Source: Haliotis rubra (Eukaryota). From it: a stretch of DNA of 64,000 bases. How positions within the stretch are numbered: the stretch's first letter is position 1; each line of letters begins with the position of its first letter. The position numbers and the translations under genes are program-made. This document shows positions 1-37,309 of the stretch, one piece after another. The stretch spans positions 868,001 to 932,000 of the forward strand of contig NW_025766103.1 of NCBI RefSeq assembly GCF_003918875.1, written 5' to 3'. The notes below the pieces were generated by a model. The model saw only the letters and a list, made by a program, of their open reading frames with translations. It did no database searches and was not told where the DNA came from.

Positions 1-3000
1 ATATGATGGCTTGTTATATACTGAATAACTCAACATGAAATGGAGTATGTTTAAAGCAAGTGAAGCTATTCCCGACCATTTTGGAGCAGGTAACTTCATG
101 AAGCATTTTGTTTCTATGATAACGATAGTGCATGTTTTAAGATTGTGACAGCAAATGTCGAGGTTTACTGAATATGAGATTCGAAATGGGTTTGTGAGAT
201 TGAATGTGAAGGTTCAAGTATGTATGGGGACTGTGTGAGAACCAGTGTGTAAGAGTTACGTATGAGACAGTCAGTACGTGTGGTAGTCGGGTAACTGTTA
301 GGCACAGTGTTAACAATAATACGTACGTATAACATATAACGTCTAACTGAAATTGTATTTGAGGATCACACATTAGGACAGTAAGCATTTGCCTAGTCTG
401 ATTCCCTACGCATTTATTGTTAGATCTTATCAGGTATATTGAATCCACAATGTTAATTAGATGTAAATGTCAATAGGACGTGAAGTCTGGGATATCATTT
501 GAGAAATTACCTATGCAATTTATCCACTAAAATTGAAATCTGATATCAATAAATAGATACCAGACTGACCAACATACAATTATTAGGGAAATGATATCCT
601 GTTCAGCATGATCAGTTTCATTTAAATGACAGTTAATAGACTGATATGCGACGAGCGGCATAAGTGAAGGTCATTATGTTCTCATATTTGTGGTTGCATT
701 GCTAGATATACACCTGGAAAAGGAATCGTATTATTCTAAAGTGATCTTGTCTGTCTGATGAAAATATGAATCCATGTACAGGTACAGATTACAGGAGGTA
801 TAATATTGGAACGTGTCTCATTTCCTCCTTGATAACAATTCATAGTAATGCTATTAACTTAACACGTGCGAATATAACACGCCGTGATGTTGCTGGAATA
901 TTGCTAAAAGTCTGAGGGTGAGGGTAGGAATCCGGTATTGAAATGAACCACATAAAGAACTGAAGTTTAAGTCTTCAAAACAATGTAAACGGTGTAACGA
1001 CAAATGGAACACATGTAGAATTATGAATGTATATATTCCAATTACCGCATAACTATAAATATATTAGACAGTGTTATAATTCCAACCGTGCATTTACTTG
1101 TGACATGTGCTAGATTAATCCATTAAGAAATCGCCGGTATGGAGTATTGCCTGGAATAGCGAAGTTCAACATATTTGAAACAAACGGATATCTCATCCGA
1201 TTTCTCGAAATGACCTCTCTATTGAACACTTTAAAAGGGATGCAACGGGACAGTTTGGTTTTGAATAGTGTCTATAACCATTGATGTGGACCACATGACC
1301 CATAGGAACTGTGGGACTGAATGGGACAACTTTCTGATTGTTGAACTTTAAGCCGTTAGCGAAACTGATTGGACAGAAACATGATGTTCCACATAGCGTC
1401 TCTACAGCTGAACACAATGCATATGACATTATCCATTGTCCATGATATTACAAACTGATGACAATACATGACCAGAGTAATGAATTTTAAGTCGACATAT
1501 GATACCTTTCCAATTTTGAAAGGACAATATATATAGTTCGCGAGCAACGTTACGACGTAGCTACCATGCTGCGTGCAAGAGCAAAAACAAACCATGCTTT
1601 CATGTCACAGAAACGAACACACGATAAATACCACGGCAAATGACCACATTATCCATAAATGGCAAAGCAGTAGTAGGTTATCCTGGGATTCAACGTGACA
1701 GATACAGTAGATCAGGATCGAAGTTACTATCTCGACCCCAAGGCCCTCAGTGGCACACTGATTGGGAACACTCGATCGGCCGCTGGTGCTTATGTCCTCA
1801 GTATACTGGTTGCTTCCTTGTAACTATGCAACCGTCCCCTATAATCGTCCAGAGCAGACTGGACAGAGCATAAATGATAACTGACCTTGAGCCTTCAAGT
1901 TGGGGATGTCTCGTTACTTGACAAGATTGAGATAAATTTTCTAAATGACGTTTTTGCAGGATAAACTAGTGGTCAATAGCATGATCAATAGCCATGGCGC
2001 CGGTTGTCACGACACGTAACAGCTAACCTTTACACTATAACCAGTTGATCAATGCTATAATCGACCTTTGAAGCACCAGTTTTGGGGACTTGTGAGGGAA
2101 TCTTTGGCGCATTACTCCATACCTGAAGTACAACTGCGTCATTGTGACCCTTACAAACACAAGAGTCAAAATGACAAAACATGTGACAATGCAAAATGTT
2201 TTCCGTTTATTTCATTGCCGCCTTGGCATGTTAAAAATAGTAAGTACAAGTTATTATTGATCATGCAACAAGCCCTTTGTTAGGGTTCATACCAAATAGA
2301 TACTTATGGCGTTTGCAAACGTTCTAGGATTTATTAACTCTCATCGCAAGATATTTTCGTTAGGTATGGTTCTGGAACCATCGGAAATTGTTTTTGAGAG
2401 CATTTGAAAAGGGTATACTGATATATGACCTGGCATAAATCGTGATTGACATGACACAGCAGGTGTCCCATCTTACAGCGGCTTTACGTAAAAAACTCAC
2501 TCACTCTTATAGCATCATAGAGCAAGTATGTATCTCTGCAACTACCACAGACAGGATATCGGCTTATAATTGTGTGCCTTCACTTGTACTTTAGCACAAT
2601 GCATAAATCCCATTTCCCACTTACCTGATCACAAACGGTCAGCTATAACTGACATGAGTCGGCTCGCCACCACATTGACCATATTAAGGGGTCGGAGAAC
2701 CAGACAAATGAGAAATAGGCTTCATGTTGTACGCAAATTGGTGTCGGAAGTTGACTGCAGGGAGTCATCTTGCCGAGCACCTTGGCATCCAGAGTCGCGT
2801 AAATAGCAGCTCTGACTGCAGACAAATTAAAAGGTGCAATAATTTGTGATGGTATCTTGAAGTTCGATAACCCTGTGTGATCTTTAACCCTTATTAATGG
2901 GTTCATAGTTCAATGTGTAACAACGAGGTCAATGGTAGAGGCGGTGAAGGGTTTGCCAGTCGGTAGATTTCAGCAATGGTGACTTTAATCGATGTCGATT

Positions 3001-3697
3001 TTTTTATTCATTTAAGACTTGGGCTATATGCCCCTCGTCATCATTTTACATTGTATACATGATAGAGTATGGTTATCCATTGAAATATACATATTTTTAC
3101 ATTTACATTTCGGTACTTACATGCATAACTTTATGTATTTACATACTTTTGCAATACTATCTTTACATGGGTTTCTTAATAATTCCAAAATTTCAACATA
3201 CTTGGTTTCTTCCAAAAATAAGGTTTAATCAGCTGTTTTCGATGTACTGTATGTTTTGGGCAAATTAAAACGAAATGGTATTCATCTTCAATTACATTTA
3301 CATTATTTTCTTTATAGTAGATACAATATCGTTTCTCCCGATCAATATTTTCATAACGCCCAGTTTCAATTGTTAATTTATGACACGAAATTCGTACCTT
3401 AGTTAAATACCTAACAGTGTTTGGATGTAAAGCATCTAAGTATAATTCATATCCAAATTCACTTTTGATATTGCTGTATAGCCATAATTTACTACTTGAA
3501 GTAATGTCATGATGCCATTTTTGAATAAAACAATCAATTAAGCATTGCTTAAAATAACAACAAAACGTACTAGCGTCAACACATCCTGGGTCACACCAAA
3601 CATATCAAAAACCATATATAAATAAAACATTTTTAACATGGAACACCCAGTTTTTGACGCCATTATTACACTGTGACAACAGCTATTCATAGATTAC

Positions 3698-4968
3698 TTA
3701 AAGGAGACAATTTGATGTACATTGCAGTTTGAACCAGTATTTTACAACCCTTAAATATCTATAAATATACAAAGGTCTACGGCCTAGTTCACCATATACA
3801 GCCATATTAGTAACATTGTGATGAACTTTAAGGATATTCTTACACAATTTTAAATGTACACGTTCAATTTCAATTGCGATTTGCAAACCCCAGACTTCAC
3901 AACCATAGTGCATAGTAAATGTAACAAAAGAATCAAACAGACCACAACCTGTTTTAGCAGAAAGGTGACCATTTCTAATGTTATGGAACAGAACATTCAT
4001 AGCTTTTGAACCTTTACCAGCTAACAATTTTTGAGTAAATCTGAAATTACCTGTGCATGTAAGTAGTTAAATTCATCTACAATCTCAAGCGGCATAGCAT
4101 TAAAATACCAATGCTCATCCTGGTTAAATTTTCGTCTTTTGCGGAAAACCATCACTTTAGTCTTCATAATGCCCCAGTCACTACAGAATTCATGCAAACT
4201 ATCCAGAGAATGTTGAAGTCCACTCGGCGATTCAGCAAGCAAGATCATGTCGTCAGCAAACAATATAAGGAACAGATTGACATATTCAATCCAAAGACCA
4301 CTATCGACGTTTTCTCGGAGCTTCAAGAACAAGAAAAATAACATGGGAGACATGACCTCGCCCTGTTTCATACCAACAGTAACATGGAAGTAGTCAGAGA
4401 TATTACCTTTATATCTAACGCAAGCTTTAACGTCGGCATACATAGCCTTTATAATAGTCCACATTTTACCACATATTCCCAAGTTATGTAATTTTAACAA
4501 CAGGCCATCTCTGTGGACAGTATCAAACGCCTTTGAAATGTCAACAAAACAACAATAAAGGCGCGAATTATCTTGAAGATAGCTTCTGACAAGTCCTTGG
4601 AGTACAAATAATGCATCTACGGTAGAATAACCATTTTTGAATCCAAACTGGACATCTGAAATGACGTTATATTTATCCACCCATACCATAAGTCTGTTAT
4701 TCAATACAGATGAAAACACATTTGCAAAGCCACTATTAATTGTGAAGCCGCGATAGTTCGATGTTAAATGAGCGTCTCCGTTTTTATGTAGAGGAATGAT
4801 AACTCCATCGGTCCAGGTGTTTGGATATATACCAGATGAGTAGATTACACTAAACAGTTTAGTAATGTCATTAATCATCAGTTCACGTGTACATTTGAAA
4901 TATTCATTCATAACTTGGTCTAGTCCAGACGATTTGTTATTTTTAAGATTTCTAATTGCTTGACGCAC
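3698..4968 (-). pseudogene. Reverse transcriptase (LINE ORF2) pseudogene, frameshifted
   Basis: ORFs 4021-4968 (KSSGLD, NYRGFT, QFGFK, FVDISKAFDTV, GMKQGEVMSP, LFADD) and 3698-4027. Confidence 0.95.
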
Positions 4969-4981
4969 TTCTTTAATGGTG

Positions 4982-5246
4982 GGTCCATGCAGGAGTATGG
5001 TGATCTACCTTCAGTTGTTGGCAATCTATAGCCGGTTTTTATATTGTATTGTCATTTAAAAGTAACATATTTTAGATTTAATTACTAGTCTTAAATTTAT
5101 CACTGTGATAATCTAGTTGTTTTACTGTCCTTCGTCGACAGGTGTTTTATAATGTAATTGTGTTTATTGTTTATTTATAACTTTTTAAGTCAAAAATGGT
5201 TGAAATATTACCGATGTGACTATAAATTTTAACTCACTCACTCACT
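4982..5246 (+). mobile_element. 3' UTR fragment of the I-group LINE, nested in the RTE-X-like element
   Basis: gtatggtgatctaccttcagttgttggc matches revcomp of ~58067-58094; ends in (TCAC)n; near-TSD TTTAATGGTG/TTTAGTGGTG interrupts the host RT reading frame. Confidence 0.85.
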
Positions 5247-7802
5247 CTTTAGTGGTGATGTCAAATTGCAGTTCATCATACAGAGCCTCATTATCATTGG
5301 TCATACTTGAGTTCACCGCGTTATCAGCATCGTCACGTGATGGGGTGCTAAAAGAACCAGCAATATTTTAAAAATAATTCATGAAGTCATTACAAGAACT
5401 GTCCATTTCACTCATACTTCTATGTGATTTAAAGTATTTCCTCTAATCGCTTACAGTTGTTCCTTGTCACTGTCGCCTTTTTCGTCGCCTTTTTAATCTT
5501 ACATTCATGTTTCATATATTTCAGGAAGTGTTGTGATAGAGTGATCAAGTATTAATGATGTCTGCAATATCCCATGGAAAAGGTCGAACAATCTCAGGCT
5601 TAAGCAACGGACCCTTTCAAGTAACGTAGGCTAGATTTGATGAATGAATTTATTGAATATCAGTGTCTTTGATGCATGATGTGTGAGGCATCACACATGT
5701 TGAGATACATACACTGTCTCTGCTATGACATCTTTGTCATGTTCTCTCAATGATGATTTCAAAGATCGTCATAGCAGTATTTCACAAACACTGTTACATC
5801 AGAGCTACAACACTCGATGTATATCTGCATAATTATGCAAAATGTCAATTATGGACATCAGGGTGATAGTCCAAATCTATAACATGAGTAACAAGAATGA
5901 TAGTCGATTCCTAATGTTGTTGTGTTTCTGTTGCTTCATATGAACACTTGACTTGCCTTTTCATGTGTTTGTGACGGTTGCCTGATGACAATGCTCTCGA
6001 TATAGAATACAGTACCTTCTCGTCAGCATTAACTTCTAGGGTGAGGCGTCTTCTGTCTTATTGGCGGGCTTTTTGAACGAAGAATCGTTCGTTGGAAGAA
6101 TTTTCGCTGGAAGTAACACACATTCACTTGATAGCTGAAAAGGTGAAACGTGTCCTGTTTGAAGATATTCTTAGTGAAATGACAATGTTCAAGGTCACGC
6201 GATCATAATATTTTGTACTTGTCTACCACTAACGTTAACACTAACAGACACGTGTTGCCCATGGATGGTCTATAGTATGGATTACACATTGGGGAATATC
6301 AGCATTCAATGTGATCCTCTGTTTTCAACTCTCATAACTGGAACAGCAATGTGAGGTGTTGACAATCTTGTGTAAACATGTCCATTGCAATTTTGGGGAT
6401 ATTGTTGATACTTCTGATCAGCAATCTTTGATTGTCTGAAGAAAGTTCAAAACCCTTACGGGCCAAAGTTCTGAAAAGTTTGAAGTACTTGGTATCATCA
6501 GTGTCAGGTAAGGAACTTAACATTGGTTGGAAACCCTTATGTTGGTTATTGTTTCTACACCATGTATGCAAAGGAATCCCAACACCAGATGATTAATTTC
6601 GTGAAATTCCAATTAAGATGGACATAATTTGGCAAATAGTTACAGTGTGTCCCTTAGAATGCATTTAACTATTTAACACTTGAAATTAAAGATCATCTCA
6701 AATATAATATTGTATTTTTTTCAACCCATGAAAGTCATAGTCAGAAATGAAGATGTTAAACCTGCATGGTTGTCCTTTATAAACGGACTATACTGCACGT
6801 ATCTTTGTGCTTTTTTGTATGTTGATTTTGTGAATAAAGTCAAATGTAAAAAAAAATACAAACACATCCCAAACAAAAACAACCGTATAAGATAAGAAAA
6901 AGGGTTGATATTAACGTGAAATAGTCCGTTTGACATTACTGGTGCATTCCTGCCTTGATGCATGTGAAATATTAGTTCAAACGGACGAAAGTTTCATTGA
7001 CACACCCGCATCCATAACTATATCAAACCACACATTCAATGTAATGGTTACAAGAATAGCTACCTTTCTATAATAACTGCTGATTATGTGTCTCATTCAC
7101 TGTCATAAGCTGTCTCCGTGTTTTGATTTGATATAATCAACCGGAATTCTTCATCGATATTCTTTAATTCTGAACAAATGAAAAACAGACAATGCTGTAA
7201 AATACATATACATTTCGATTCATATCAGTCCAATGAATATCAGTTAAAGCCCTGCATCTAGATTCAAATAACAGGGGATTGTTCTCAAGAGAGAAACTGT
7301 CAGTTGCACATTCTGCCATTCCGCACCTCCATATCTTCATCCTCCACTGAGTTATCTCACAAGTGAACCACTCCATCTCTTTCCTCATCTTAGTCAAGCC
7401 TGCGTGGACTCATCCGTCAGAGGCTAGACAGCCACTATCTTCCCCTGCCGCTGACGACCCAAACCCAAGGACTCAGCACTGCCAAGATGTCCTCAAGGAA
7501 CTGTATTTACAAGGTGATTGCCTTTCTGTGCGGAAGGATTAAGCGACGATCACTGTCGGGCCTAATGAGGCGCCCAAGTCTACGCGCTGTTCGCGTTGTT
7601 CGCTTTGATCCAGCATCCGTAACCGATCATCTTCATCAGTGTGCTCTGTATACGGCATGATATGTTACTAATACGTGGTTTCTGCACTATACTTGAAAGG
7701 ATTCAGTACAAAGCAATTGTGTTCCTGAAAAACACTTGCAAATTGGATACATAAATATGTGCGTGTGCTTATGTGTGTCTGTGTATGTGAGTGATTGAAA
7801 GC

Positions 7803-7894
7803 GTAAGTGTTTCATTTATGTACATCACAGAGCCATAATTTATATAAGTGTAAGTGCTTCATTTATGTACATCACAGAGCCATAATTTATATAA
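7803..7894. repeat. 47-bp tandem duplication
   Basis: gtaagtgYttcatttatgtacatcacagagccataatttatataa occurs at 7803 and 7850. Confidence 0.95.
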
Positions 7895-9711
7895 TGTATA
7901 TAATTTATATATATGGTCTATTCAGAAGCAGCTTAATGGCAAGGGGAATCTGATGCTTAAGATCATATAAGGATATCTACAGACATTGTGCTTGGTTATA
8001 TGTGGCAAAGTAAGATAAATACATTGCTTGATAGTTTGTCCTTTGAGACAGCACCTACACGTCCTCATTCCTGCCATTCCCAGCATAAGATGATGTGCAT
8101 TGCGTCGTTGCGTTCTTAGGGGTCGTCATTTCCATTTCCATTGGTTCAATATTAGTAATAAACATATTCCGACGACACTCACTGTCAACTTATAGTGTTG
8201 ATCGTGAGTTTAAAGACATGTAAGCATGATAAACAGCGCAACCAAATTTCTGTTGTTTAATTATAATGTACTGGAATACTTCCACAACTCCCTTGTGCAT
8301 TTAAACACAGGGTTACAGTTATAGTAAGCGGGCACGTCTGACTAACGGTACTTTGGGGTAATAAAAAAAGGCTGCTGTTCAAGGGCCATTCCTAGGGAAC
8401 AATAATTGAAGTTCACTGAATGAGCGGATGGTTGAATGAAGTAGGTTTTGCAAATCTTCACAACGAATTGCATCTTCTGTGATGATAATGCCTATAAATA
8501 AAATAGTATGTTTATTGTTTTGATCATATCAACAAAAGGGGAGTTGTTCGTAGAGAGGAAATGTTTTATTCACTTGCTCCGATGTATCTTATACAGCAGG
8601 ACATTGCGATGTATACATTCGACTTGGAACGTACACATGTACATGGTATAGTTGATTTACTTCCTGTAACAGCCAACCAACTTGAACACCACCACGGAAT
8701 GTTCATAGGTGACGATGGATTTATGGTGTGTTACCCGTTGGGAGGCGACAGTCTTCAGATGGATTGGTTTTAATATCCTGACGACGACCTAAAGCAATGG
8801 AAATGATGAGGACGGTAAATCGTCGTTGCTACAGGCGTAACAGATCTATGCACGAACTGATCACCAGGAGTAAACGACTACTTCTGCTCACCTATTCCGT
8901 TAGTATGCCTTTTTCAAATGTCCTTCAACTTCCCAGACACCATACATCCGGAGTGAAAGCATAGCTTCCATATTAAACATATAGCTTTTTACAACATACA
9001 AAAGGGTTATTAAATTCAATATCTGGTGAATCCAGGCTCAGCATCTTGCCTTTGCAACAAAATTCAGGTTAAAACAGGTGAAAAGAATCTTGCTAAGAAG
9101 ATCGTCTTTTTTGCTTTGTTATCAAATATAGATCCATGATATGAACATCGTCTTTATGGACATTCTGAGTTAACATGTAGCTGCGTGATAGGAACACCAC
9201 AGTCCCCGGTTATGTGTTGTACATTACATAGAGCGTCTGGTTTTTAATTGCAACTCGTAACTGTCACTGGTAAAGGAACACTTTCACCATAGTTATTGCA
9301 AGGTGATACGGGACTTCATGATAGCAACGCAACCGTCACACTGCATTCCAGTTAATATCGGTTAGTACGTTAGAATGACCGTCGTCATTGTTATTCCAGG
9401 TAATATTTGGCGATATGAAAGTAATAACGGACTGGTTCAATTTGACAGACGTTTTAAATATTAGGGACCTACCTCTCACCCCATTCTGGAAGTTATACAA
9501 GCGAATTTAATGTCTATTTCGCAACCTAAATATGATCTGTCATCATCATGTTGTTGCTGGCGTGGTAGTCAACTGATTCGACCTGCACAACTCAGGGGTT
9601 TTTCGGCTACAATGAGCTCACACACCACTGTATCCATGTACTAAGGCGTACATGTACGCTATCACCTACACTACATATTCTCGTTATTCCTCAACATTAC
9701 TAGCGTATACA

Positions 9712-9905
9712 TCATACCAAAAGACGTTAAAATATGGTACTTGTTGGTCCCTGCATGGCGCTCGGCATTAATGGGTACAAGGACTGGTCGGCTCGGAGTC
9801 AGTATAATGTGTCTGAGTGGAGTATCCATGCTTAACCGCGTCATGATATCTCAGAGGGCTAGCACTATAAAACCAGCTTCAGTCTGGGCTAGTACAAGAA
9901 GCCAC
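9712..9905 (+). mobile_element. V-domain-like SINE fragment
   Basis: cataccaaaagacgttaaaatatggtacttgttggtccctgcatggcgctcggcattaatggg resembles the V-SINE domain; a degenerate relative lies at ~41145-41240. Confidence 0.55.
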
Positions 9906-10008
9906 ACATTACACACGTCGTCATATGAGCGAAATATTTTTAAGTACCTCACCTACTTGCGTATGCAATCAGTTTACATTTCCTTGGTAGGCATGTGACA
10001 CATCAACT

Positions 10009-10400
10009 ATGTCAGTGACAATTTACGTTTCAATATATTATTCAACACCATTACTCACGCTACTGAAAACTCGTCACATTCTGCAAAGTTTCAAACTTAT
10101 CCCCTCCACGTTAAATACGTATGTAATCAGTTTCCGGTGACACTTCATATAAAACGTGAAGCATGTCAATGACAATTTAAGTATTAATATATTGTCCCAC
10201 ACCATCAATCACTCCACTGAAAACTCGTCACATTCTTCAAATTCCAATACCCTCAGTATCCCTTTACGTTGAATTCTGTTACTGTCACCAGGACATTTGA
10301 AGTCGGTTTCAGGTGTCATTTGGTTGACTTTGATTTTGAGCATGTAAAACATGAGTATAAAATAGTACGTGAAGGACAATTTAACTTTCCGAATATCCAA
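10009..10400. repeat. Diverged ~155-200 bp tandem repeat (2-3 units)
   Basis: atgtcaRtgacaattta...actgaaaactcgtcacattct starts at 10009 and 10163, with a partial third unit at ~10368; counterpart in C at 50950-51400. Confidence 0.8.
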
Positions 10401-11805
10401 ATGGCTGATTGGCGTACGATACAAGTATCTCTGTTTTCAAACGTAGTGGCAATGACGCTCAGTCAGACATGATTACAAAATGAATCATGGAATGTATTGA
10501 AACTCGAGACTTTGTCAAGTGTTTCGATTTTGTTTTAAAGTTTTCCGCCTCTAGACAGAGGCATATAATACCAAATGAGATTCCAGGAAAATTTAAAACT
10601 TTGGTAGCAGACAAAGAAGTGTTGAAATAGTACTGAAAAAGGCGTCAATTCCCACAAGGCATTATCCACGATGATAGGTAGACATGACAATCTCTACTTT
10701 CACCTTTAATATTTTCAAATATACCTCAAGCTGATCTCATTTGTAACTCTGTCCCCACACTATGGGGCAACTGAGATAAAAACAGACAGTGAAGCATTAT
10801 AGAAGCCACGCTAAACACAGAAAAAAACATACTATGCAGTTCTTACACAAGACCTTTTCCAGTAATTTTGTTCCTTTTCATATTGCATTCATTTTGAAAA
10901 TGAAGAAAATACTTTGATATAATTTATTTTATAACATCATTAAAGTGTGAATATTTCCAATTCATGTTTGTACATTAACATAAAGAAATACATGTGATGT
11001 TATATGACACTGTTTACCCGCATGTTTCAGACGACTTATCTGTAATTGAAAAGTTTAGGTATCCTTTCTTGGAAGAAAATGACATTCCATTTGCATCACC
11101 TGTTTTCTTGGCAGGTTTTCGAAACTGTACAAATACAATTTCAGAAGCCCTGAAGCCCGGATATGTCTTCAGCAGAAGCAGGATATCCTTTAACAACAGC
11201 GGCCGCAGGTATTACATGAGGTTGTTTTTCAATCCGATTTCTTCCTCCTTATAGATCGAAAGAAATTGGAATCTAAATTTATTTTGAATTGTTCCCATGC
11301 CCATTTATATTCACGATACCATGCTGCACTAAAATATATGCTGGGGAAGATTAAAATATAAGCCAGTATTCATTCAGATACTGTCATGTCGTTTGACTTC
11401 GTCAGTTCAATGTTGAGGGATAACGTTGTGCATGTTTCCAGCCACTGGTTTGCACAACCAAGTTTGCAGTAATATTAGGTGTATTGTATGTGTAGTAGGT
11501 AGGAAAACGTTGCCGCATTCAGCAAATACCGCAGCATTTACAACGTTAGCCTGTAAAAGAACACAGTCTTGACCAACCGTTAACTGCACTCCTTTCCATG
11601 TATATGGGCATGGGCATAAAATATGAACAGCTACTTTTCTCCTGTTTAATTTTAGGACAACTGTTAGTCACTTTGGACCAAGTCTTGTCTGGAATTTTGA
11701 TATATCAATACCTTGTTGGGAAAACACATGGACAGGCACCTAATCGCCAGCTTCCACAAAATGGAAGTCGGACAACTGGTAGTGTAGACTGCGGACTTTG
11801 TGTAT

Positions 11806-11961
11806 TTGGGGTGGCTGAGCGGCCTAGGCGTCTGACTTTGTGTGCTGGCGATTAGGTGCCTGACTCTGAGGGCGTGGGTTCGAATCCCGCATGGGACTCA
11901 ACCCAAAAAGTTCTAGAATCTGTACTTTACTAAGAAAGTGTTATCCCAAATATAACATATG
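11806..11961 (+). mobile_element. tRNA-Leu-like SINE (second family)
   Basis: A box GTGGCTGAGCGG, B box GGTTCGAATCCC, long variable region; tail gtactttactaagaaagtg..cccaaatataacatatg shared with 39090-39207. Confidence 0.75.
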
Positions 11962-13978: not shown

Positions 13979-14056
13979 CCAAGCTGATGGGGCAACATGA
14001 CGGGTATACTGTAGGCTGCGCATCAAAACTCATGAATCACAAACACCTGTTCTTAC

Positions 14057-24830: not shown

Positions 24831-24871
24831 AAGAGCATACAATTTTTGCATTTTTACTGAGTATTGTTACT

Positions 24872-26178: not shown

Positions 26179-26342
26179 NNNNNNNNNNNNNNNNNNNNNN
26201 NNNNNNNNNNNNNNNNNNNNNNNNNNNNNNNNNNNNNNNNNNNNNNNNNNNNNNNNNNNNNNNNNNNNNNNNNNNNNNNNNNNNNNNNNNNNNNNNNNNN
26301 NNNNNNNNNNNNNNNNNNNNNNNNNNNNNNNNNNNNNNNNNN
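26179..26342. other. Assembly gap (164 N)
   Basis: Run of N. Confidence 1.
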
Positions 26343-28821
26343 TTTGTGTGTAATCCCTTGATTGTCTAACGATGTGATTTAGAACATATCGCGAAAGTTA
26401 AACTGTAGGCATTGCTTGGTGTCCTGCTGTATGTGTGGGAGAAATACCCTTGTTATAATGAGTGTTGCAAGTCTGGAAAGTCTCCCATGACTCATATGGT
26501 CTGTCGGCGATATTTCCTAGCGAGACAACTCAGGCCTGGGGGTATTTATTTAACTGGTGTTGATGGACCTTAGTGTCGTATACCAAATTAACAAACTCAG
26601 AATTTTTGCAAAACCTGCCTGTTGGCTATTTTGTATTGGTCTCCAGACGTCGCACAGCAGAAGAGATAAATAACTCTCACTGTTGTTATAAAACGACAAA
26701 TCATAAGCTCACGCTCAATCCAGATATGACGAAAACGTTTCAACTCATGACCTCTGTCCAATCTCTTTAAAGCCTTATTAAACTGTTTACCTTGTATAAG
26801 GTTATGGCTGTTCACATCAGGGAATGAGTTTAGTTTTATGATCAAATACAATTTAACATAAGATTTAATGAAAACGAAGAGTCCATCGGCTAGGTTATAG
26901 AAACACCGCAAACACCTGAAGACATAGGTGACCCTGAAATACAGTTATGAAAGTCAAAGGACAAACTAAACATAATATATACGCAAGAACGTGTGGTCAC
27001 TTGCTACCGAATTGATTATGTCATTGTTGGAATCAAACCGCAATAATTACCTACCACATTAGCCAAGGCAATATTTTTCAGTGTGTCATCCATACTCTTA
27101 TATCATCCATGGGCAGGAGGTGCCTTGTAGTGCTTAACGTTAACGGTGGACAAGTAAAACATATTAAGATCGCAAGACCTCGAGCTTTGTCATTTCCTGT
27201 GCAATGCTTTATACAGGACACCTGGCCGCTGTTATCCTTAATAAAATATGTTATCACTTATCAAGTGTTCATCTATGTAGTAAATCTATGTTGGTTACTT
27301 TCAGGGTTTATACTTTTCTTCTTTCAGGGTAATTTAAATTGCGATTTCTGTCTTGTTAACGTGAAATTTAATGACAGTACTTATTTGTTGATGATTATAT
27401 TGACGACGAAGAGACAATAGTTCACCCTGTTTTTCAGACAGTCTCAGTTCTTCTGGACAAATATGGTTGTATGCTTTTAATTATGACATAAGACTTATCA
27501 TCCCATGAGTCAATGTTCATAGAAGGTACTTAATGCTAAATCAGACTTGGAGGAGTGCTATCCGGCACCCATCACAAAGACATGCAAAGACAAGATAAGA
27601 GTTCACTCAATACAATACAATACAAAAATAAATCCACCAAACAAACAGAATATAACACGGGAACATACGCCCATGGAATCATTTTCATACTGATGCATCA
27701 GATTTGGAAAACCTTCCATCTATTTGAAAGCTTTGCTGAAACCATAAATGTGATAACTGATGTAATACCTCTTGAGTAAGACTATGTATAATCCCAATAG
27801 ACAGAATTGTACATATCGCCGTAAGATTGGAAACCGTATATACATCTCAACATATCATGTGTCATGATTTCTACGACGTAGACACTGCTATCCCACTGAT
27901 TCATTTATCAAAGATAACGTGTTCATGCGACTTCGAATTACTTGAGTTTAAAGAGCTGTTGGTTAAACCTGAAATGGTTTCACGTCTGTGCTTTGGTTGC
28001 AACATGACAACACCCTCACACTATGTAGCATAACAAGACTTACTTAACTGAATGACTAATGAATGTGCGTTAAGATTAAAGTAACTACTTCCGGAACTAT
28101 AAACTGCTAAGCCCTTCACCACTTCGACCATTGACCTCGCTGTTACACTCTGAACTCCGCCCCCGTTTATAAGGGAGAAAGATCACACGAGGTTATCGCA
28201 AATCAAGACACTAGCACAAGTTATCGCATCTTTTAATTTGTCTGCAGTCAGAGCTGGTATTTACGAGTCTCTGGCTACCAAGGTGCTCGGCAAGGTGCGT
28301 CGCTGCAGGCAACTTCCGACACCAATTTGCGCACAACATGAAGCCAATTTCTGATTTGTCTGGTTCTCCGACCCCTTAATATGGTCAGTGTGGTGGCGAG
28401 CCGGCTCATGTCAGTTATAGCTGACCGTCTTTGATCAGCGGAGTGGGAAGTGGGATTTATGCATCGTGCTGAAGTACACTTGGAGGTCACACAGTTATAA
28501 GCCCATATCCTGTCTGTGGTAGTTGCGGAGATACTTTCAAAGTGCTTGTTCCATGATGCTTTAAGATGGGATACCTGCTGCTTCATACCAATCACCAGAA
28601 CATACATGAGTAATACACTTTCAAAATACACCTGGTGGTTACAGAACCATACATAACGAAATTATCTTGCGATGAGTTAAATTATGGAGCTTATGAAAAC
28701 TGTAAGGGCTAAACATTTCTACTTGGTATGCATTTTCAAAAAGGCGCTTTTCACATGGTCGCGCTGTGAATGATAATGTTAACTTTTTAGCAATTTTAAC
28801 ACAGCATTATATGGTTAACAT

Positions 28822-28936
28822 GAGTGAGTGAGTTTAGTTTTACGCCGCACTCCGCAATATTCCAGCTATATAGCGGCGGTCTGTAGAGAGTGAGTTAAGA
28901 TTTTAAGTCACATCGGCAGTATTTCAGCCATATCGT
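28822..28936 (-). mobile_element. Stacked SINE tail and LINE tail fragments
   Basis: gagtgagtttagttttacgccgcactccgcaatattccagct (SINE 3' end) followed by gagtgagttaagattttaagtcacatcggc (LINE 3' end). Confidence 0.75.
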
Positions 28937-30988
28937 GAGTGAGTGAGTGAGTTGATATTTAACGTCACATCGGCAATATCTCAGCCATATCGTGACGAAA
29001 ACAATTTATATAATACAAAAATGAAAACATTGTGAAGAGTGAAACCTGTCGACGATGGACAGTAAAAATACTAGAGTACCACATATATGTATATAAAATT
29101 TGCATGTCAAACTAAAACAGTGTAATTAAAGAAGACAATACAATATAAAACAAGAGCTATAGATCGCCAACATCTGAAGGTAGCCAGATCACCATACTAG
29201 GAACATTACTTTTGCTACCTGCATGGAGCCTAGCTGGAGTTACACCATCCCTTCAGCCGCTGGCGATTGTAGGATAATTTAGACGAAATTTAAAAAACAA
29301 AACATACTACGTTTAAAACTTGGTACGTGAAAATTTTACTTTGAAAGTTTTAGGGACTTGCGTACCCTCTCAGGAGGACAATAATTTTACGCTACTTGAA
29401 ACCCCTTTCAGGATACAGTCACTAACAATCTAAGTTGATGATCTGAACTACCAATTATAAAACTTGATCTATTTACAAAACATATATCAAACTTCATTTA
29501 ACAAATCTATCTCTTTTAAAAAATCAATGATTAAATGATAATTAACTTTAATAAAAAGGTACGGAAGCGTAGCAGTGCCACGGTGAAAATTTTTTTGGTC
29601 TTACTATCTCCAACGTAGTACTTAATATCTCCTACGTAGGACTTAGTATCTCCTACGTAGGACTTAATATCTCCTACGTAGGACTTAACATCTCCTACGT
29701 AGGACTTAGCATCTCCTACGTAGGACATAGTATCTCCTACGTAGGACTTAGTATATCCTACGTAGGAGTTAGTATCTCCTACGTAGGACTTAGCATCTCC
29801 TACGTAGGACTTACTATCTCCTACGTAGGAGTTAATATTTCCCGTAGGAGATGATCGATATACGTTTATATGGATTAATCTGAAACGGTCGACTTAAAGC
29901 CCCAGCCACGCACACAATCTCCTGTTTCACTGTTTCAGTCACTGTAAGAGTCTACAGTCATTCGTTTCATTCACTATTAGAGTCTACTATCATGTGTTTC
30001 ATTTACTGTTAGAGTCTACTATCATGTGTTTCAATTTACTATTAGAGTCTACTGTTTCCTTCACTATTAGAGTCATGTGTTCAACTAATTGTTGCACATT
30101 AGTACTGTGTTGGACCGACTGTTATACTTTACTGACTTGCGTTCAGTTTGCTCTACTATTACGCGTTGCAGTTAGTTCATTGTTATATGTTGCACTTTGT
30201 TACACTTTACTATTATGCTTTGGATATTTCAGAGGTCGTTGCACATAAATCATAAATTGCTTGTACAGACGAGTCTTAGACTATAGGTGGCAATCTATGT
30301 GCAAGTATCCCCTTATATTTATACACATAACTATAATGACAATTCTTTGCCTTTTTGAATTTCGTATTGTTTTACGCCGCACTCAACACTTGTCCATCCC
30401 AGTCAAGTCAACCTGTAAACAATTACGAATAAAACCGCAAACGAGCGTTGCATCCGATCCAACCTAGCCCTATAAAGACAAGCAACAACTTGCGGAGGTC
30501 GTGTTATGACCCGAGTTTCATATCAAAACCTCACCCCAGCCATCCCAACCACTTCTGTGTGTGTGTGTGTGTGTGCGCGTGTGTGTGAATAGATGTATGT
30601 ATGATAGATTAAACATAACCATACCCAAACCTCCATAACTGCAATTAGAACAGGGTCCACGTCACCCTAACGTAATACATACACAATAACACTGTATAGT
30701 AACACTGCGTTAGTGTCATGAATATTCACTGACTCACATTTCGACTATCTAACGTCCTGCTTAGCCAAACATTTCTCAACTTAATAACCATCCTTAAAAA
30801 AGGAGATAGTAAGTCCTACGTAGGAGATACTAAGTCCTACGTAGGAGATACTAAGTCCTACGTAGGAGATACTTAGTCCTACGTAGGAGATAGTGACCCC
30901 CCCAAATTTTTTTACCGTGGCCCTACTACGCTTCCGTAAAAAGGTCCTTTACTGTTCTGATATTGAAATATTTATCTCTTACGATGGT
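28937..30988 (-). mobile_element. I-group LINE 3' fragment (~650 bp) split by a MITE
   Basis: 29160-29559 matches 58061-58475 and 30939-30988 matches 58470-58520; (GAGT)n tail at 28937. Confidence 0.9.
29560..30938. mobile_element. Non-autonomous DNA transposon, IS3EU-like, with subterminal 21-bp arrays
   Basis: ~30-bp TIRs TACGGAAGCGTAG..GCCACGGT; 6-bp TSD AAAAGG; ~11 left and 4 right copies of ATCTCCTACGTAGGACTTAGT. TAYGG termini plus a 6-bp TSD fit IS3EU as I recall it. Confidence 0.85.
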
Positions 30989-31708
30989 GGTCAACATGAT
31001 GCATTGTCGAACGTTTTCTAATTTTGACACTTGTCTTGTAAAGGGGGACCAAGGAACAGTCGTCTTTCAAGGATGAGTCGAGCAGAGGTTATTGCGTCAC
31101 ACGTCCCTAAAACTGATGCTTTAAAGATCGATTAAAACATTGAATGGTTTGAGCTGGTACGTATCGTGACACCCAAAGCCATGGGTATTGATCGTGCTAT
31201 CGACCAGTTGTTTGACCTGTCTAAACTCGATTATTTTCTGATAAACGTGAAACACCTGGAACATTAACACGCCATGCAACAACTAACAGACACTCCCGGC
31301 CCAACTTTCAGTATCAAGGTTGGTCATCATTTATGCTCCGTCCAGTCTGCTCTGGGCAATCATCTGGTGGTAAGGGACACTTCAATAGTTACAAGGAAAT
31401 AAGGAAAGTGTACCCAATCATTGTGTCACTGAGGGCCTTGGGGTCGAGATAGTAACTTTCTGATCTACTGCATCTGTCACGCTGAATCCCAGGAGACCCA
31501 CTGCTGCATTGCCATTACTGCTGAGGCTTTGGCGGACAGCATTTTATCAACTTTATCGATAATGTGGTCATTTGTCTTAAATGGTTATTGACACTCCACT
31601 CGTAAGGCCGTGGTGTTTATCGTTTGTTTATGTAGTGCTCGCCAGCATGGTTTGTTTTTGCTTCGACACTGCAATGTGTTAACTACGTCGTAGCATCGTT
31701 CGTGCACT

Positions 31709-32175
31709 CACACCCTCAAAGGGGGTTGACGTAGCGTAAAATTATTGTCCTCCTGAGAGGGTACGTAAGTTCCAAAACTTTCAAAGTAAAATGTAAACTT
31801 ACCATATTTTAAACGTAGTATCTTTGTTCTTTTAACTGCCGGCTAAATTTTCCTACAATCGCCAGCGGCTGAAGGGATGAACTAGGGTCCATGCAGGTAG
31901 CAAAAGTAATGTAAGTTCCCATGGTTCCTAGTATGGTGATCTACCTTCAGTTGTTGGCGATCTATAGCCCGTGTTTTAAACTGTATTGTCCTCTTTAATT
32001 GAAATGTTTAGCTTTGCTCGCTAGTTTTATTCATATCTGTGATTCTCTAGTTTTTTACTGTCCATCGTCGATAGGTTTAATCTTCAAAATGTTTTCTCTT
32101 TATATTGTATAAATTGTTTTCGTCACGATATGGCTGAGATATTGCCGATGTGACGTTAAATATTAACTCACTCAC
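31709..32175 (+). mobile_element. I-group LINE 3' fragment
   Basis: Matches revcomp of 58061-58320 plus the tail; 9-bp TSD TCGTGCACT (31700-31708/32176-32184). Confidence 0.92.
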
Positions 32176-33699
32176 TCGTGCACTAACTCATACCAGTATT
32201 TGACATTCATATTTCAATATATGTTCTATTTGACATTACACCGTTAAGGCTGTTTAAATCTTTAAGAACGTTTTACAGTTTAGTATTTTGTTGGGTTCTA
32301 TTCAATACCGGAATCTTACCCTCACCCTACGAAACCCCAAACTGAATTTAATATGCAATTATTCACAGAGTATTGTCATTTACATGGATTGTTCGAAACA
32401 TCCACACTCTCATCTATGTGAGTAGAATACAATGAAATGCAGTCGTGTCTGATACTTCGTCTGATAAACCTCGTTATAGCCACAATAACTCGTTGAGCTA
32501 GTGGCTGCAAGAATTGTATCATCTCTTGAGATTGATAATACGATGTGCGATTGAGATTGACATCCAATGATCAAGGGAAAAATATCAGCGCCTTGAGCAA
32601 GCACTAGTTGCCTGGATATGTGCGCTATATTTCCTATAAAAATTAATAATACTTATAGCACTCTACTGTGCGTCGTCTTGGTTAAACAATCATCTTTAAC
32701 TGGGAGCACAAGTTTGGATATTTAGCTTATATCAAGAGAACTTTGGTTTGCTTGATGCGTTATATATTTGACTGGTCAGTCACAATACCCGCAGATGCGG
32801 CTCGAACTATATGTCCATGCGAAGCAAAAATACCTCCACAGGAATGAAATACTTCACGGAAGTGATGACAAAATGTTCTATGATGAGATACCTCTGTCGA
32901 GAAGAGATGATACGTATAAGTCAAAAGCAGGCTGCTCTAATGTTAAATAATGGCCAATGGTGAAATTGTATTGTGGTCCTAAATGTTGATGTTGATCTGT
33001 GTGGACTTCCAGGTGAATTACCTTTACTCTGACAGTGTTACCCAGGCGTGAGGAAGGGCTTTACATACAATAAAGTGGAAGATTTCCTCGCCTTTGTCTT
33101 GAAGGTGTCACATGAATAACTGATAATCTTTACCTGCTCAACCATGCGGCGCTGGGCTGTTGTTGCTTGAGTGAAGGGCAGCAGTCTGTGATACATTCTA
33201 AACGCATCTGCTACATTTTTGTTTTTAGGGGCATGCTTATCCATCCATCAGCGATTATACAGTTGCTTTGAAGTGGTGCACTTAGTGACAACGTCAAGTG
33301 ACTCACTTGGTCTTCATGCGTGCCAGATTCATATGAAAAGCAGATTCGTCCTGAGCAGACCCTGGCTTGGCAGCACGATGATCTTCACCAAAGGTGTGAA
33401 CGTCGACAATTTGTATCAACTGGGACTTTACATCTGCATTAACCTGTTGTACCGTAATTATATTAAATGCCGTCATCATTAAACCAAAACATTTACTTGT
33501 TCAAGTCAATGTGTTTTCATACACTACTGCTGTGGTTGTCTGAATCTTCGTTAAAAGAAGTGGTACTGAAGCGTTCATCCATCTCAACACCCACATGTAT
33601 AAAGGGCAAGGAATTGCTCCATAGTCATTGTAAATAGTGACATATGTGTAAAGGACATGATTTCAACATCACGGTAATTATAACCTGTGTTTTAATATG

Positions 33700-33865
33700 T
33701 TAAAACTCTACATGTGTTAAGATGTTAAGAGCATGCTTCTGACTACTCGCTTTCCTCGTAGGAAGTGTAACACCTGTGTTAAAAGTGTGCCTATGACTAC
33801 TCGCGTACCTCGTAGGAAGTGTAACCCCTGTATTAAAGGCGTGCTCCTGCCTATTCGCGTATCTC
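33700..33865. repeat. 54-bp minisatellite, ~3 units
   Basis: gactactcgc..cctcgtaggaagtgtaac at 33741 and 33795, plus partial units. Confidence 0.85.
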
Positions 33866-34742
33866 AGTCATTGTCACGCCTGTGTCAAGTTCATACACAA
33901 GACAAAAATGGTGATTTCCAAAAATTTCCAATTTGGAAATATCATATTTCCAAACATTTCCAAACTTAGAAAGATGATGTTTCCAGGGCTTGGAAATGTT
34001 TGGAAATTTAGGAAGGATTTTACCACTACTTCTTTCAATTTCTCCTTTTCCCCAAGGATCCCCGGCCCATGAGTGTAGTGTTACCATGAATTGTTATCAA
34101 GGAGACACATTCGAATATTTCTACTGTCTACTTCTACTTGTATTTTGTATTCATATTTCAATCTGAAAGACATTACCGCTTTCCAGGTTTAGTCTACCAA
34201 AGCAATCACAAACATGAGAACATAATGATTATCATTTATGCAGCTCGTCACATTTCAGCACATTAACAGTAGCTGTCATTAAATGAAGTTGATCATGCTG
34301 AGCAGGGTATCAATTGCTAAGTGACTGTATTTTGAGCAATCTGGAACATTGCAAATTTCAATTTCAGTGAATAAATTACAATTGTCATTTCAAAAGCGAT
34401 ATCCTAGACTTTATGTCCTATCGACGTCTTAGTCTAATTAACAGTGTAGATACAACATACCTAATTAAATCCATGCAATAAATGTGAAGGGTAACAGATT
34501 ATGGATATGTTTATGGTCTTGAATGGGATCCTCAAATGAGATATCATCTTAGAAAGTATATATAATGTGTACTTAAATGCAGCCTGCAAGCATGGACAGT
34601 ATTATGTGAAATACACGCAAACAGGTGAACTTTTCAGCCCCTCTATCCTCCATCGTCAGTGTTAGGCTTGATGTGATCTTCATATTGTCTCAATATGATT
34701 TGTGGTGTTGTCAGTGTTTGGAAAATGTAATGTGTATTTAGT

Positions 34743-35012: not shown

Positions 35013-35049
35013 GTGTATTTAGTATGCGTGATGTAGTTTGTGTTAAATG

Positions 35050-35259
35050 CGTACTAGTTGTAAATTAAGAGCTGTGATATTCTAGTAGTTTTACTGTCCT
35101 TTGATGACAGGTTTTTAATTATCAATAAAAATCAATTTATTGTTTTTATATTCATATAAATTAAATTGTTCTCGTCACGATATAGCTGAGATATTGCTGA
35201 GACGTTAAATGTTAATTCACTCACTCACTCACTTATTCACTCACTCACTCACTCACTCA
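35050..35259 (+). mobile_element. I-group LINE 3' fragment
   Basis: ttttactgtcc..cgtcacgatatagctgagatattgc..(TCAC)n. Confidence 0.85.
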
Positions 35260-37309
35260 TTATGGGGACGCAGAAGGGTCCCTCACATAAGGCTATATGG
35301 ATATTCCAATTTAAAGAGTTTCACTAACGTTTATTTTACGATGGCTGTAACGTAATCAACTACATATATGCATATATTCTGCAGTTACCTCGGTCTCATT
35401 TCTTGTGTGTTGTTGGCAATGTTTATTTATCTTATTACGATAATTATGAGGGTGTGGCTTAATACCGCTTTCAGAGTATTATACTGAAGCGTCTGTCAGT
35501 GACAGCTGACGTAGTAGTCCACTGCCAAGTAATGCGTAAGCTGCTGCATGGCTCAAAGGGGGCCATGGCGTATTGTGTCCATTGGTGCTCACATGAAACG
35601 GTATTGTAGAAAGATTCGATGAACATAGACATATGTTATGGCTCAATGTGTTGTGGACGTTTAGTGTCCTTTGGTATCACATGAACACGGGTTTTCGGAA
35701 TGACCAGATGAACACAGATATATATTTTGAGCTCACGTAAGCTGAGGTATGCATACAGTAAAGGCTCGTTATGCCTAGAGTTTGCCATGAACCCGTTACC
35801 TTATGTAGAGACACCAAGGGGAGAGGTAGGAGTTAAGTGAGTCCCTTGAACTTGCCACAGAGTAGATCGAATACGGATATATATCTGATCCCTATTTCGG
35901 GAATGCTAACTGAAGAATGTCAAGAAGATTCCGACTCAATTATTCGCCTTACTGAAGAGCTGGTTTCCTTACGGTTTGGGGATAAGCTTTCATTCGCGTC
36001 AGCATTGTGGCTTCATGAAATAAATAAATCTGTTTAGCTTGACACTAAATTATCTCTTCTCTACGAAAGCTCTCACAGGAGACCCTTAAATAATCATCTT
36101 GAGAATCACGCGATCTCTTTAGTAGGACCACAGTCACTATTTTCGGATAGACAACATAACGATTGGTCTCGTGATGTTGATCTGATTAAAGCCTTATAGA
36201 TTAATGTGCCAAGTCAGTTCACCTAGCGTAGATTTGTAAGCCAATTCTGACTTGTCAGTATTGTTCACACAATGTCTGAGTCGTTTATATCTAACATGTA
36301 ACTGCTTGATCGCATATAGCTGTGTGATCTTGGACCATCACGAATACAGTCAAACGAAATTAAATAGTACAGCATCTGATATATAGCCATTTACATGTTA
36401 AGCAAGCTTGTATCAAGATACATATCTAAGTACAATAGCTGAAGTACATTGCGTCAAATAATATAGCTCTTAAGCAGCGACATGAACACGTGTGTCTTAA
36501 CCACTTGTTATTTTAATCTCCGTAATACCTAGCACCATTTTTAACGTCTCTTGTATGACGCGGCTGTGAGTTCTAACCAACAACCTTCCCCTCTGGGCAC
36601 AGCTGCTCTATCTACTACGGCACAGATGCAAAAACACTAAGGGTAGATGCCACTTCGATAGATATGCATATACTTAGATCAAATGTGTTTTTGTTCGAAC
36701 TTTACAAGTAGACAATGAACAGGACATATGTAACACTTAATTTGTAATGCATACACATGGAAATGCGCATGGACATGCACCTTGACCTTACTTCAAGACT
36801 TCGAGTAGCAATAGGTCATGTTGCCTTGGCTGTTCTCTTGTGTCGTGTTTGTAATCCAATGCAGATTTTACTAACACAGCTTTTCCTCTTTGTATATTTA
36901 ACACAAAGAACTGAATCAGGAATAAGAGGTCATGATGTGTCTGTATAAATGTATGCTACTTAATGCTGACTCAGTTTTAACTCCAGGCCTCTCATTGTAA
37001 TAAGGTGTATTAAAATAATTAAAACGTACGCTTCTTAATGCGGATACAGTTTGAGCCCCACGCAGAGACTGCTCATGGTTATAAGGTAAAGCGTATTTCA
37101 CAGGTCTCGGTTGAGCAATACATGCAACGAAGTGGCTGGCATTTTTGAAACGTACGCAAGGCAGATGAATATACAGACATTAACCACTTGCTGTCAGAGG
37201 GTTAGTTGCTGTGGAAATTACCAACAGATAAACACTCAAAAAGGATTAATTAATATAACAAGCGTTTCAAAGAAAATGTGTATCACATACGTATCTCTTG
37301 TATATGTTT

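What the first reader, a model, noticed from the sequence alone, without database searches (positions are those of the whole stretch)
1..35300. Hidden ~35 kb imperfect palindrome (arms A and B, ~2.6 kb spacer)
Seen: at least ten colinear reverse-complement anchors, from 330~34560 inward to 15010~17665, at roughly 60-85% identity by eye and interrupted by arm-specific insertions. No ORF or listed element explains it. Inference: an old head-to-head inverted duplication that has persisted. A read-through transcript could form patchy dsRNA, so this is a candidate hairpin-RNA/endo-siRNA or piRNA-cluster locus; it may also simply be neutral.
Basis: partly seen in the sequence, partly recalled or inferred. 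Interest (0 to 1): 0.72.

Follow-up and report, generated by a model that had tools for sequence, protein, structure and literature searches.

The report
Old decayed inverted duplication, non-coding
The hidden palindrome is real and about twice as long as reported, but it looks like an old, decayed, non-coding inverted duplication inside a locus that keeps copying itself, and nothing in the sequence supports an RNA-silencing role.

Summary
Arm A (320-15010) and arm B (34575-17677) share 15 colinear reverse-complement blocks. These cover 4.2 kb at 71% identity, with a chain score of 2277 against 214 or less in controls. The anchors occur only at this locus, so they are not scattered transposons.

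The structure is larger and more complex than reported:
- The anti-diagonal continues past the window start and past 35300. The full palindrome is about 75 kb, from about -29.8k to 45.2k.
- The right arm was later partly re-copied in tandem (copy C at 45.6-58.1k, then D, E and F downstream). A is therefore one inverted copy facing an array of five direct ones.
- The 164-N gap lies between anchors that stay colinear with A, C and D.

I found no coding signal, no Rfam family and no conserved RNA fold. Only 182 nt of arm A lie in perfect complementary runs of 21 nt or more.

Gene conversion or constraint could explain them, and I could not decide between the two.

A 2025 survey found no endo-siRNA pathway in molluscs. 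The scan found a similar non-coding palindrome elsewhere in this genome (s1-352091).

Verdict: a real but ordinary, probably neutral relic.

The parts
320..15010 (+). Arm A (unit X0), the inner left arm of the palindrome, paired with arm B
   Evidence: 15 colinear inverted blocks at 65.7-81.2% identity. The blocks are locus-specific.
15011..17676 (.). Central unpaired spacer of 2666 nt. 15011-16204 is still A-type sequence that copy C retains and B lacks. 16722-17304 is a dispersed ~580-bp repeat.
   Evidence: No A/B homology is detectable here (z -0.5 against shuffles). A-C homology runs to 16204. The repeat has many copies genome-wide at 74-86%.
17677..34575 (-). Arm B (unit X1), the inner right arm
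   Evidence: It is direct to copies C and D.
26179..26342 (.). Assembly gap inside arm B. The flanks are colinear with A, C and D.
   Evidence: B-D offsets are 61936 before and 61925 after the gap. The A-B anchors on either side stay on the anti-diagonal.
35263..45168 (+). Unit Y1, the outer right arm. It pairs in inverted order with upstream DNA at about -5843 to -29789 (C1213:838.2-862.2 kb, loci L004-L006).
   Evidence: 16 further colinear inverted blocks. Two tested blocks have exactly two full-length copies in the genome; one of them also has a partial 74% match in the decayed Y2 copy.
39540..39945 (.). High-identity island: 94.6% over 406 nt to the left arm (-14663..-15068), with exact runs of 81, 68 and 47 nt
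   Evidence: No Pfam hit, no fold signal and no period-3 pattern.
35798..36249 (.). High-identity island: about 91-99% to the left arm (-6307..-6746). Its core is also the best-kept part of the decayed third copy Y2 (68043-68511, 68-78%).
   Evidence: Fold z-score 0.61.
40781..40994 (.). High-identity island, about 90% to -24883..-25093
   Evidence: a 55-nt exact run.
43422..43519 (.). High-identity island, 91% to -27190..-27287
28215..28464 (.). Block Xc core, about 90% to A 2599-2848. It is kept at 85-88% among the older copies A-D (up to 100% between the youngest, E and F) and is GC-richer (0.50).
   Evidence: The ORF in copy C is broken by stops and frameshifts in A, D and E and only partly aligned in B. 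No covariation and no Rfam match.
45604..58059 (-). Copy C (unit X2), a tandem partial re-copy of the right arm. It is inverted to A (70-79%) and direct to B. 56812-58059 is locally inverted.
58061..63890 (-). LINE insertion next to copy C. It has an endonuclease domain, and a related copy is inserted in the left arm at -23438..-16267.
   Evidence: Pfam Exo_endo_phos; 73-80% match to the upstream copy.
4021..4968 (-). LINE reverse-transcriptase fragment, an insertion specific to arm A
   Evidence: Pfam RVT_1, E 1.9e-24.
19600..21175 (.). Dispersed transposable element carrying a 405-bp internal tandem repeat, an insertion specific to arm B
   Evidence: Many copies genome-wide at 80-92%; TRF row at 19797-20550.

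Best explanation
This is the decayed remnant of one old inverted segmental duplication in non-coding, transposon-rich DNA. A block of roughly 28-30 kb, made of units Y and X, was copied in reverse orientation next to itself. The layout became Y0-X0 | spacer | X1-Y1, running from about -29.8k to 45.2k in window coordinates.

Since then the two arms have diverged to about 72% identity over the third that still aligns. They have also taken up different LINE, SINE and other insertions. The left arm is now about 46 kb and the right arm about 27.5 kb.

Later, parts of the right arm were re-copied in tandem to the right, giving copies C, D, E and F. The youngest pair is 97-100% identical, so the locus is a long-lived duplication hotspot.

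The few islands of 90-95% identity most likely reflect short arm-to-arm gene-conversion tracts, locally slow-evolving sequence, or both. The structure needs no function to persist, and I read it as neutral.

Shown here: the anatomy, the copy number, the locus specificity, and the absence of coding or RNA-structure signals. Inferred: the order of events, the conversion, and the neutrality.
For: - The inverted chain scores far above controls, and it extends to 30 blocks and 9471 aligned nt across about 75 kb.
- The anchors are found only on this contig.
- There are six X copies, with A the only inverted one.
- Distances and trees place A as the deepest split, then B, then C/D, with E and F nearly identical.
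- The only Pfam domains are LINE ones.
- The longest conserved-block ORF is broken in its paralogues.
- Conservation is equal in all six frames.
- There is no period-3 pattern in mismatches: 22 windows, with 1 at p<0.05 against 1.1 expected.
- Rfam finds nothing above threshold.
- Fold z-scores run from -0.01 to 0.70.
- The covariation term is +1.12, with one compensatory pair out of 82.
- The arms carry different transposon insertions.
Against: - Islands of 90-95% identity in a ~70% background are not expected from uniform neutral decay.
- In one island the same core is also the best-kept part of a third, decayed copy. That hints at constraint rather than conversion alone.
- Block Xc is kept at 85-88% among the older copies A-D.
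- The X data put A and B as the most distant pair, whereas Y0 and Y1 are each other's closest relatives. The history is therefore not a single clean event.
- Expression was not tested.
Confidence: 0.7

Rival explanations
1. The islands are exons or regulatory modules of a pair of unannotated paralogous genes, probably non-coding, one in each arm. The palindrome would then be a duplicated gene pair rather than junk.
For: There are five or six short islands at colinear positions with 90-95% identity against ~70% flanks. They have only two full-length copies in the genome. One island core is also the best-kept part of a third copy. A donor-like GGTAAG lies on the minus strand near 39597.
Against: There are no Pfam hits, and no ORF runs through the putative donor. 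Mismatches fall 6/6/10 by phase (my count from the positions listed). Conservation continues about 55 nt past the putative donor at 92%, so there is no crisp exon edge. There is no fold signal. No transcript data were available.
Confidence: 0.15
2. The locus is a piRNA cluster: a long, transposon-rich transcription unit whose inverted layout yields sense and antisense transposon fragments.
For: The region is rich in LINE and SINE fragments in both orientations. Molluscs have abundant somatic and gonadal piRNAs (PMC12479628).
Against: Transposon richness is general in this genome, and the palindrome itself adds nothing specific. The arm-specific LINE copies point both ways (ORFs on + at -22.6k..-16.6k, and on - at -2.8k..-1.1k and 3.2-5.0k), so no orientation bias is visible. 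No small-RNA data could be obtained.
Confidence: 0.07
3. The locus is a hairpin-RNA or endo-siRNA locus. A read-through transcript folds back so that the arms form dsRNA, which Dicer then cuts.
For: The inverted arrangement is real.
Against: Overall the arms are 71% identical with many indels. Only 182 nt of arm A lie in perfect runs of 21 nt or more. The best islands are 25 kb and 54 kb apart, whereas known hpRNA loci (my recollection, not checked here) are compact with near-perfect arms. A survey of 32 molluscs found no evidence of an endo-siRNA pathway.
Confidence: 0.04
4. The palindrome is an assembly artefact, such as a chimeric fold-back read or a wrong scaffold join at the N gap.
For: An N gap lies inside arm B, and fold-back chimeras do occur in long-read assemblies.
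Against: Artefactual fold-backs give near-identical arms, whereas these differ by about 28% and carry different transposons. The centre is in continuous sequence about 9 kb from the gap. Both gap flanks stay colinear with three paralogous copies.
Confidence: 0.02

Closest known systems
Ancient inverted segmental duplications (fold-back palindromes) in animal genomes, including the ~28-kb one this scan reported elsewhere in the same genome (s1-352091)
   Same: Locus-specific inverted copies lie side by side with a short unique spacer. They are non-coding, deeply diverged, interrupted by arm-specific transposons, and carry patches of higher identity attributed to gene conversion.
   Different: This one is larger (about 75 kb). 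It has an asymmetric 2.7-kb spacer. It is also joined to a tandem array of five further partial copies of one arm, two of them very young.
Ampliconic sex-chromosome palindromes (human Y P1-P8 and X-linked palindromes; from established knowledge)
   Same: Large inverted repeats with a unique spacer, with arm-to-arm gene conversion invoked.
   Different: Those arms are more than 99% identical along their whole length and carry testis-expressed gene families. Here identity is about 72%, only short islands are kept similar, and no genes were found.
Drosophila hairpin-RNA (hpRNA) loci, e.g. those described in PMC10292708
   Same: An inverted repeat that could in principle fold back if transcribed as one RNA.
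   Different: From my own knowledge rather than a test here, hpRNA arms are compact (hundreds of bp to a few kb), adjacent and near-perfectly complementary, and they yield 21-nt siRNAs. Here the arms are tens of kb long, 71% identical and interrupted. The host clade shows no endo-siRNA pathway (PMC12479628).
Inverted-duplication rearrangements made by fold-back priming or template switching (DUP-TRP/INV-DUP, breakage-fusion-bridge; from established knowledge)
   Same: An inverted copy abuts direct copies of the same segment with a short spacer at the inversion junction.
   Different: Those are recent, near-identical events seen in patients or tumours. Here the junction is too old for microhomology or breakpoints to be read.

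Membership tests
Inverted segmental duplication | Two copies in opposite orientation with colinear internal order, beyond chance | tested here: met
   15 blocks, rising to 30 blocks. Chain score 2277 against 214, 28 and 0 in the controls.
Inverted segmental duplication | Copies are locus-specific rather than dispersed repeats | tested here: met
   The anchors hit only C1213:868-996 kb. The outer blocks have exactly two full-length copies genome-wide.
Inverted segmental duplication | Usual operational threshold of at least 1 kb at 90% identity or more | tested here: not met
   Identity is about 72% overall, so this is an ancient duplication below the threshold. Only islands of up to 450 nt reach 90-95%.
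Hairpin-RNA / endo-siRNA locus | Arms form a long, nearly continuous duplex | tested here: not met
   71% identity with indels. Only 182 nt of arm A lie in perfect runs of 21 nt or more. The best islands are 25-54 kb apart.
Hairpin-RNA / endo-siRNA locus | A single transcript spans both arms and the loop | not testable with these tools
Hairpin-RNA / endo-siRNA locus | 21-22-nt Dicer products, and a host with an endo-siRNA pathway | not testable with these tools
   No small-RNA data were available. The literature reports no evidence of the pathway in 32 molluscs (PMC12479628). The host's identity as an abalone rests on earlier scan notes that I did not verify.
piRNA cluster | Dense 26-31-nt 1U (and 10A) reads from a long transcription unit | not testable with these tools
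piRNA cluster | Transposon fragments enriched, often with an orientation bias | tested here: inconclusive
   Transposon fragments are present in both orientations. There is no formal annotation and no visible bias.
Ampliconic palindrome maintained by gene conversion | Arm-to-arm identity above 99% over the whole arm | tested here: not met
Tandemly duplicated protein-coding gene cluster | Conserved ORFs or exons with codon-position bias or domain hits in the repeated unit | tested here: not met
   Pfam finds only LINE domains. ORFs are broken in paralogues. Conservation is equal in all frames. There is no period-3 pattern, although power is limited to 22 windows.

The most novel reading that the evidence does not exclude
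The 90-95% islands are functional non-coding elements kept alike in both arms. They have only two full-length copies in the genome and sit in a ~70% background at colinear positions. One of them is also the best-kept core of a third copy. They could be exons of convergent paralogous long non-coding or piRNA-precursor transcripts. Read-through across the palindrome would then pair about 400 nt of near-perfect complement, in an animal clade thought to lack endo-siRNAs.
Probability: 0.1. Interest if true: 0.5.

Novelty: new member of a known kind. Interest (0 to 1): 0.22.

Why it matters
If it is neutral, as I think, its value is descriptive. It is a readable fossil of how one region of a large animal genome, apparently an abalone's, has duplicated repeatedly. 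The record runs from one old inverted copy through tandem re-copies to a pair that is almost identical. It also shows that raw-sequence reading can pick out 70%-identity palindromes.

It would matter more if the high-identity islands proved to be transcribed. That would give a concrete test of whether molluscs process endogenous long dsRNA, a question a recent survey answers in the negative.

Tried and rejected
1. Scattered interspersed repeats instead of an anti-diagonal: rejected by colinearity and by genome-wide searches.
2. A tandem or inverted protein-coding gene family: rejected.
   - No domains other than LINE ones.
   - The 183-aa ORF in copy C is broken in the other copies.
   - Conservation is equal in all six frames.
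   - There is no period-3 pattern.
3. Structured RNA in the conserved islands or in block Xc: nothing found. Rfam at the gathering threshold and in E-value mode gave only a sub-threshold tRNA-like hit in a SINE at 39000-39058. Fold z-scores were about 0, and there was no covariation.
4. An originally spacerless fold-back whose centre has merely diverged: no residual homology in 15011-17676, even after removing the inserted repeat.
5. Assembly artefact or mis-join at the gap: rejected.
7. Naming the species from the assembly size through the literature: two paper searches found nothing. 'Abalone' therefore rests on earlier scan notes only.
8. A Pfam call with wrong coordinates failed and was corrected.
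Full report
**Setting.** The window is G000:C1213:868001-932000 of a 1.38-Gb, 2855-contig animal genome. GC content is 38.7%, and the only N run is at 26179-26342. Earlier notes of this scan call its LINEs 'abalone-type'. I could not confirm the species from the literature, so I treat 'mollusc/abalone' as probable, not shown.

**Step 1: is the palindrome there?** Yes.
- Minus-strand self-blastn shows a monotone anti-diagonal from 320-720<->34575-34180 inward.
- I then compared 1-16340 with the reverse complement of 16341-35300 using sensitive settings and chained the result. This gives 15 colinear blocks, 4232 aligned nt, 71% identity and a chain score of 2277.
- The same procedure scored 214 on the direct strand, 28 on the reversed-only sequence and 0 on the complement-only sequence.
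- The innermost block is 14778-15010<->17918-17677.
- Whole-genome searches with 320-2990, 6992-9020 and 10145-12218 hit only this contig, between 868 and 996 kb. The exceptions are a ~220-bp dispersed element near 11750-11970 and a 33-nt SINE piece near 878-912.

**The N gap.**
- Arm-B blocks on both sides of 26179-26342 keep the same relation to copy D (25254-26169 at offset 61936; 26410-26805 at offset 61925).
- They also keep their relation to copy C and to arm A (sums 33371 and 32877).
- The two sides are therefore consistent with one continuous sequence and a gap of roughly the stated size.
- There is no ORF across the gap whose frame could matter. I did not try to fill it.

**Step 2: what else is there?** I fetched 80 kb upstream and 120 kb downstream. 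Three things change the picture.

- With the upstream LINE copy masked, the chain has 30 blocks and 9471 aligned nt at 72%. It runs from -29789<->45168 to the centre.
- The palindrome is thus about 75 kb (C1213:838.2-913.2 kb).
- The left arm is now about 46 kb and the right arm about 27.5 kb.
- The difference comes from arm-specific insertions: a 7.5-kb LINE at -23.5k..-16.1k, about 5.6 kb at -14.4k..-8.7k, and about 5.5 kb at -5.8k..0.3k.
- Two outer blocks tested genome-wide exist in exactly two full-length copies, one per arm. One of them also has a partial 74% match in the decayed copy Y2.

(b) *Arm A is also inverted to a third copy, C.*
- A 7217-16204 matches C 54285-45604 in 11 blocks at 70-79%.
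- This is much stronger than A-B over the inner 9 kb.

(c) *B and C are direct repeats about 29 kb apart, and more partial direct copies follow downstream.*
- D lies near 86-92k, E near 108-112k and F near 126-128k.
- Probe mapping shows six X copies, with only A in the opposite orientation. There are two full Y copies (Y0 upstream and Y1 at 35.3-45.2k) plus a decayed Y2.

**Order of events (inference).**
- For block Xe the K2P distances are A-B 0.30, A-C 0.26, A-D 0.25, B-C 0.20, B-D 0.20 and C-D 0.11.
- For block Xc, D, E and F form a tight clade, with E and F identical.
- This fits an early inverted duplication (A against the ancestor of B-F), followed by successive tandem re-copying to the right that continued until recently.
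- Two things do not fit a single clean history.
  - B has lost or replaced most of the inner sequence that A and C still share. Part of the replacement is a dispersed element at 19600-21175.
  - In Y the two palindrome arms are each other's closest relatives, with Y2 equidistant from both.

**The centre.**
- A-type sequence continues to 16204, as judged from copy C.
- A dispersed ~580-bp repeat occupies 16722-17304.
- No residual A/B homology is detectable in 15011-17676, even with that repeat removed (z -0.5, against z 37 for the neighbouring anchor).
- The junction is too old to read a mechanism from it.

**Step 3: does it encode or fold into anything?**
- Pfam hits in the window are only LINE domains: RVT_1 at 4021-4968 and Exo_endo_phos at 61061-62044.
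- ORFs over the conserved islands give nothing. The only row is a chance-level 14.5-bit hit, far below its cutoff.
- Translated comparison of all arm-A ORFs with the rest of the locus shows similar conservation in every frame and on both strands.
- The 183-aa ORF in copy C (57426-57977) is interrupted by stops and frameshifts in A, D and E and only partly aligned in B.
- Mismatch phase in 22 gap-free windows shows no period-3 excess: 1 window at p<0.05 against 1.1 expected.
- Rfam finds nothing at gathering thresholds. In E-value mode there is only a sub-threshold tRNA-like match inside a SINE at 39000-39058, and nothing at block Xc.
- Folding of the two largest islands gives z-scores of 0.70, -0.01 and 0.61.
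- A five-copy alignment of Xc has a positive covariation term and one compensatory pair among 82.

**The one feature that is not plainly neutral.**
- Identity is very uneven. Against a 64-76% background there are islands of 90-95%:
  - 39540-39945 (94.6% over 406 nt, with exact runs of 81, 68 and 47 nt);
  - 35798-36249;
  - 40781-40994;
  - 43422-43519;
  - 44328-44391;
- Short gene-conversion tracts between inverted arms would produce this pattern.
- In island 35798-36249, however, the same ~300-nt core is also the best-kept part of the decayed third copy, at 68-78% against under 55% in the flanks.
- Block Xc is likewise kept at 85-88% among the older copies A-D.
- Local constraint or a low local mutation rate therefore cannot be excluded. 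I could not separate these explanations.

**The functional hypothesis.**
- For a fold-back dsRNA the arms are poor. Only 182 nt of arm A lie in perfect complementary runs of 21 nt or more on the anti-diagonal.
- The only good partners are 25 kb apart (Xc) or 54 kb apart (the 39.5k island).
[quoted passage not shown] It notes this despite many inverted repeats in those genomes (PMC12479628).
- A piRNA-cluster reading is not excluded, but nothing specific supports it. The arm-specific LINE copies point in both directions.

**Comparison and verdict.**
- The structure is a member of a known kind: an ancient inverted segmental duplication, here attached to a still-active tandem duplication array.
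- It fails the defining features of hpRNA loci (a long, near-perfect duplex) and of conversion-maintained ampliconic palindromes (arms more than 99% identical).
- The scan has already described a comparable non-coding palindrome elsewhere in this genome (s1-352091).
- I rate it real, correctly spotted and larger than thought, but ordinary. The remaining open point is the nature of the high-identity islands.

Noticed in passing
window 28941-32177: A nested ~3.2-kb inverted repeat lies inside arm B. Two copies of a dispersed LINE-tail/SINE element (28941-29412 and 31714-32177, 83-93% complementary) face each other. Each is followed inward by an array of a 21-bp, partly self-complementary unit (29600-29849 and 30801-30892, up to 96% complementary). 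A (TG)16 run sits near the mid-point at 30556-30587. It would make a better hairpin than the large palindrome, but it is built from transposon copies.
   Followed up: partly
L002-L003, window coordinates -43055 to -35440 (C1213:824.9-832.6 kb): A ~7.6-kb element is flanked by 465-bp direct repeats that are 100% identical (-43055..-42591 and -35904..-35440). It carries open frames of 1193, 629 and 312 aa on the minus strand. The 1193-aa frame holds DUF1759, which I recall (not checked here) as typical of BEL/Pao gag. It looks like a very young LTR retrotransposon. I observed it only.
   Followed up: partly
L009-L013, window coordinates about 94-130k: Young tandem duplication with a period of about 18.2 kb at 93-99% identity (for example 96580-98698 <-> 114704-116813 at 98.8%). 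The locus is therefore still duplicating.
   Followed up: partly
window 56812-58059: Copy C carries a local inversion of about 1.25 kb relative to copies B, D and E. It lies directly next to the 5.8-kb LINE insertion at 58061-63890.
   Followed up: no
window 42209-42487 and upstream -26790..-26625: A (TAG)n microsatellite sits at colinear positions in both arms of the palindrome, so it seems to predate the duplication.
   Followed up: no
window 39000-39058 (-): A tRNA-like match (28.6 bits against a gathering score of 29) lies inside a ~170-bp dispersed element. That element recurs at 13851-13980, 18650-18821, 38897-39071, 51875-52050 and 56624-56800, and is probably a tRNA-derived SINE head.
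   Followed up: no
L001-L003, window coordinates -59.4k to -32.6k: A separate set of direct repeats lies upstream, with periods of about 8.5 kb and 14-16 kb at 72-89% identity. It is unrelated in sequence to the X and Y units and is a second duplicated block on the same contig.
   Followed up: no
window 14480-14760: The first ~280 nt of the best A-C block belong to a ~275-bp dispersed repeat with many copies at 73-74% genome-wide. The insertion appears older than the A/C split.
   Followed up: no
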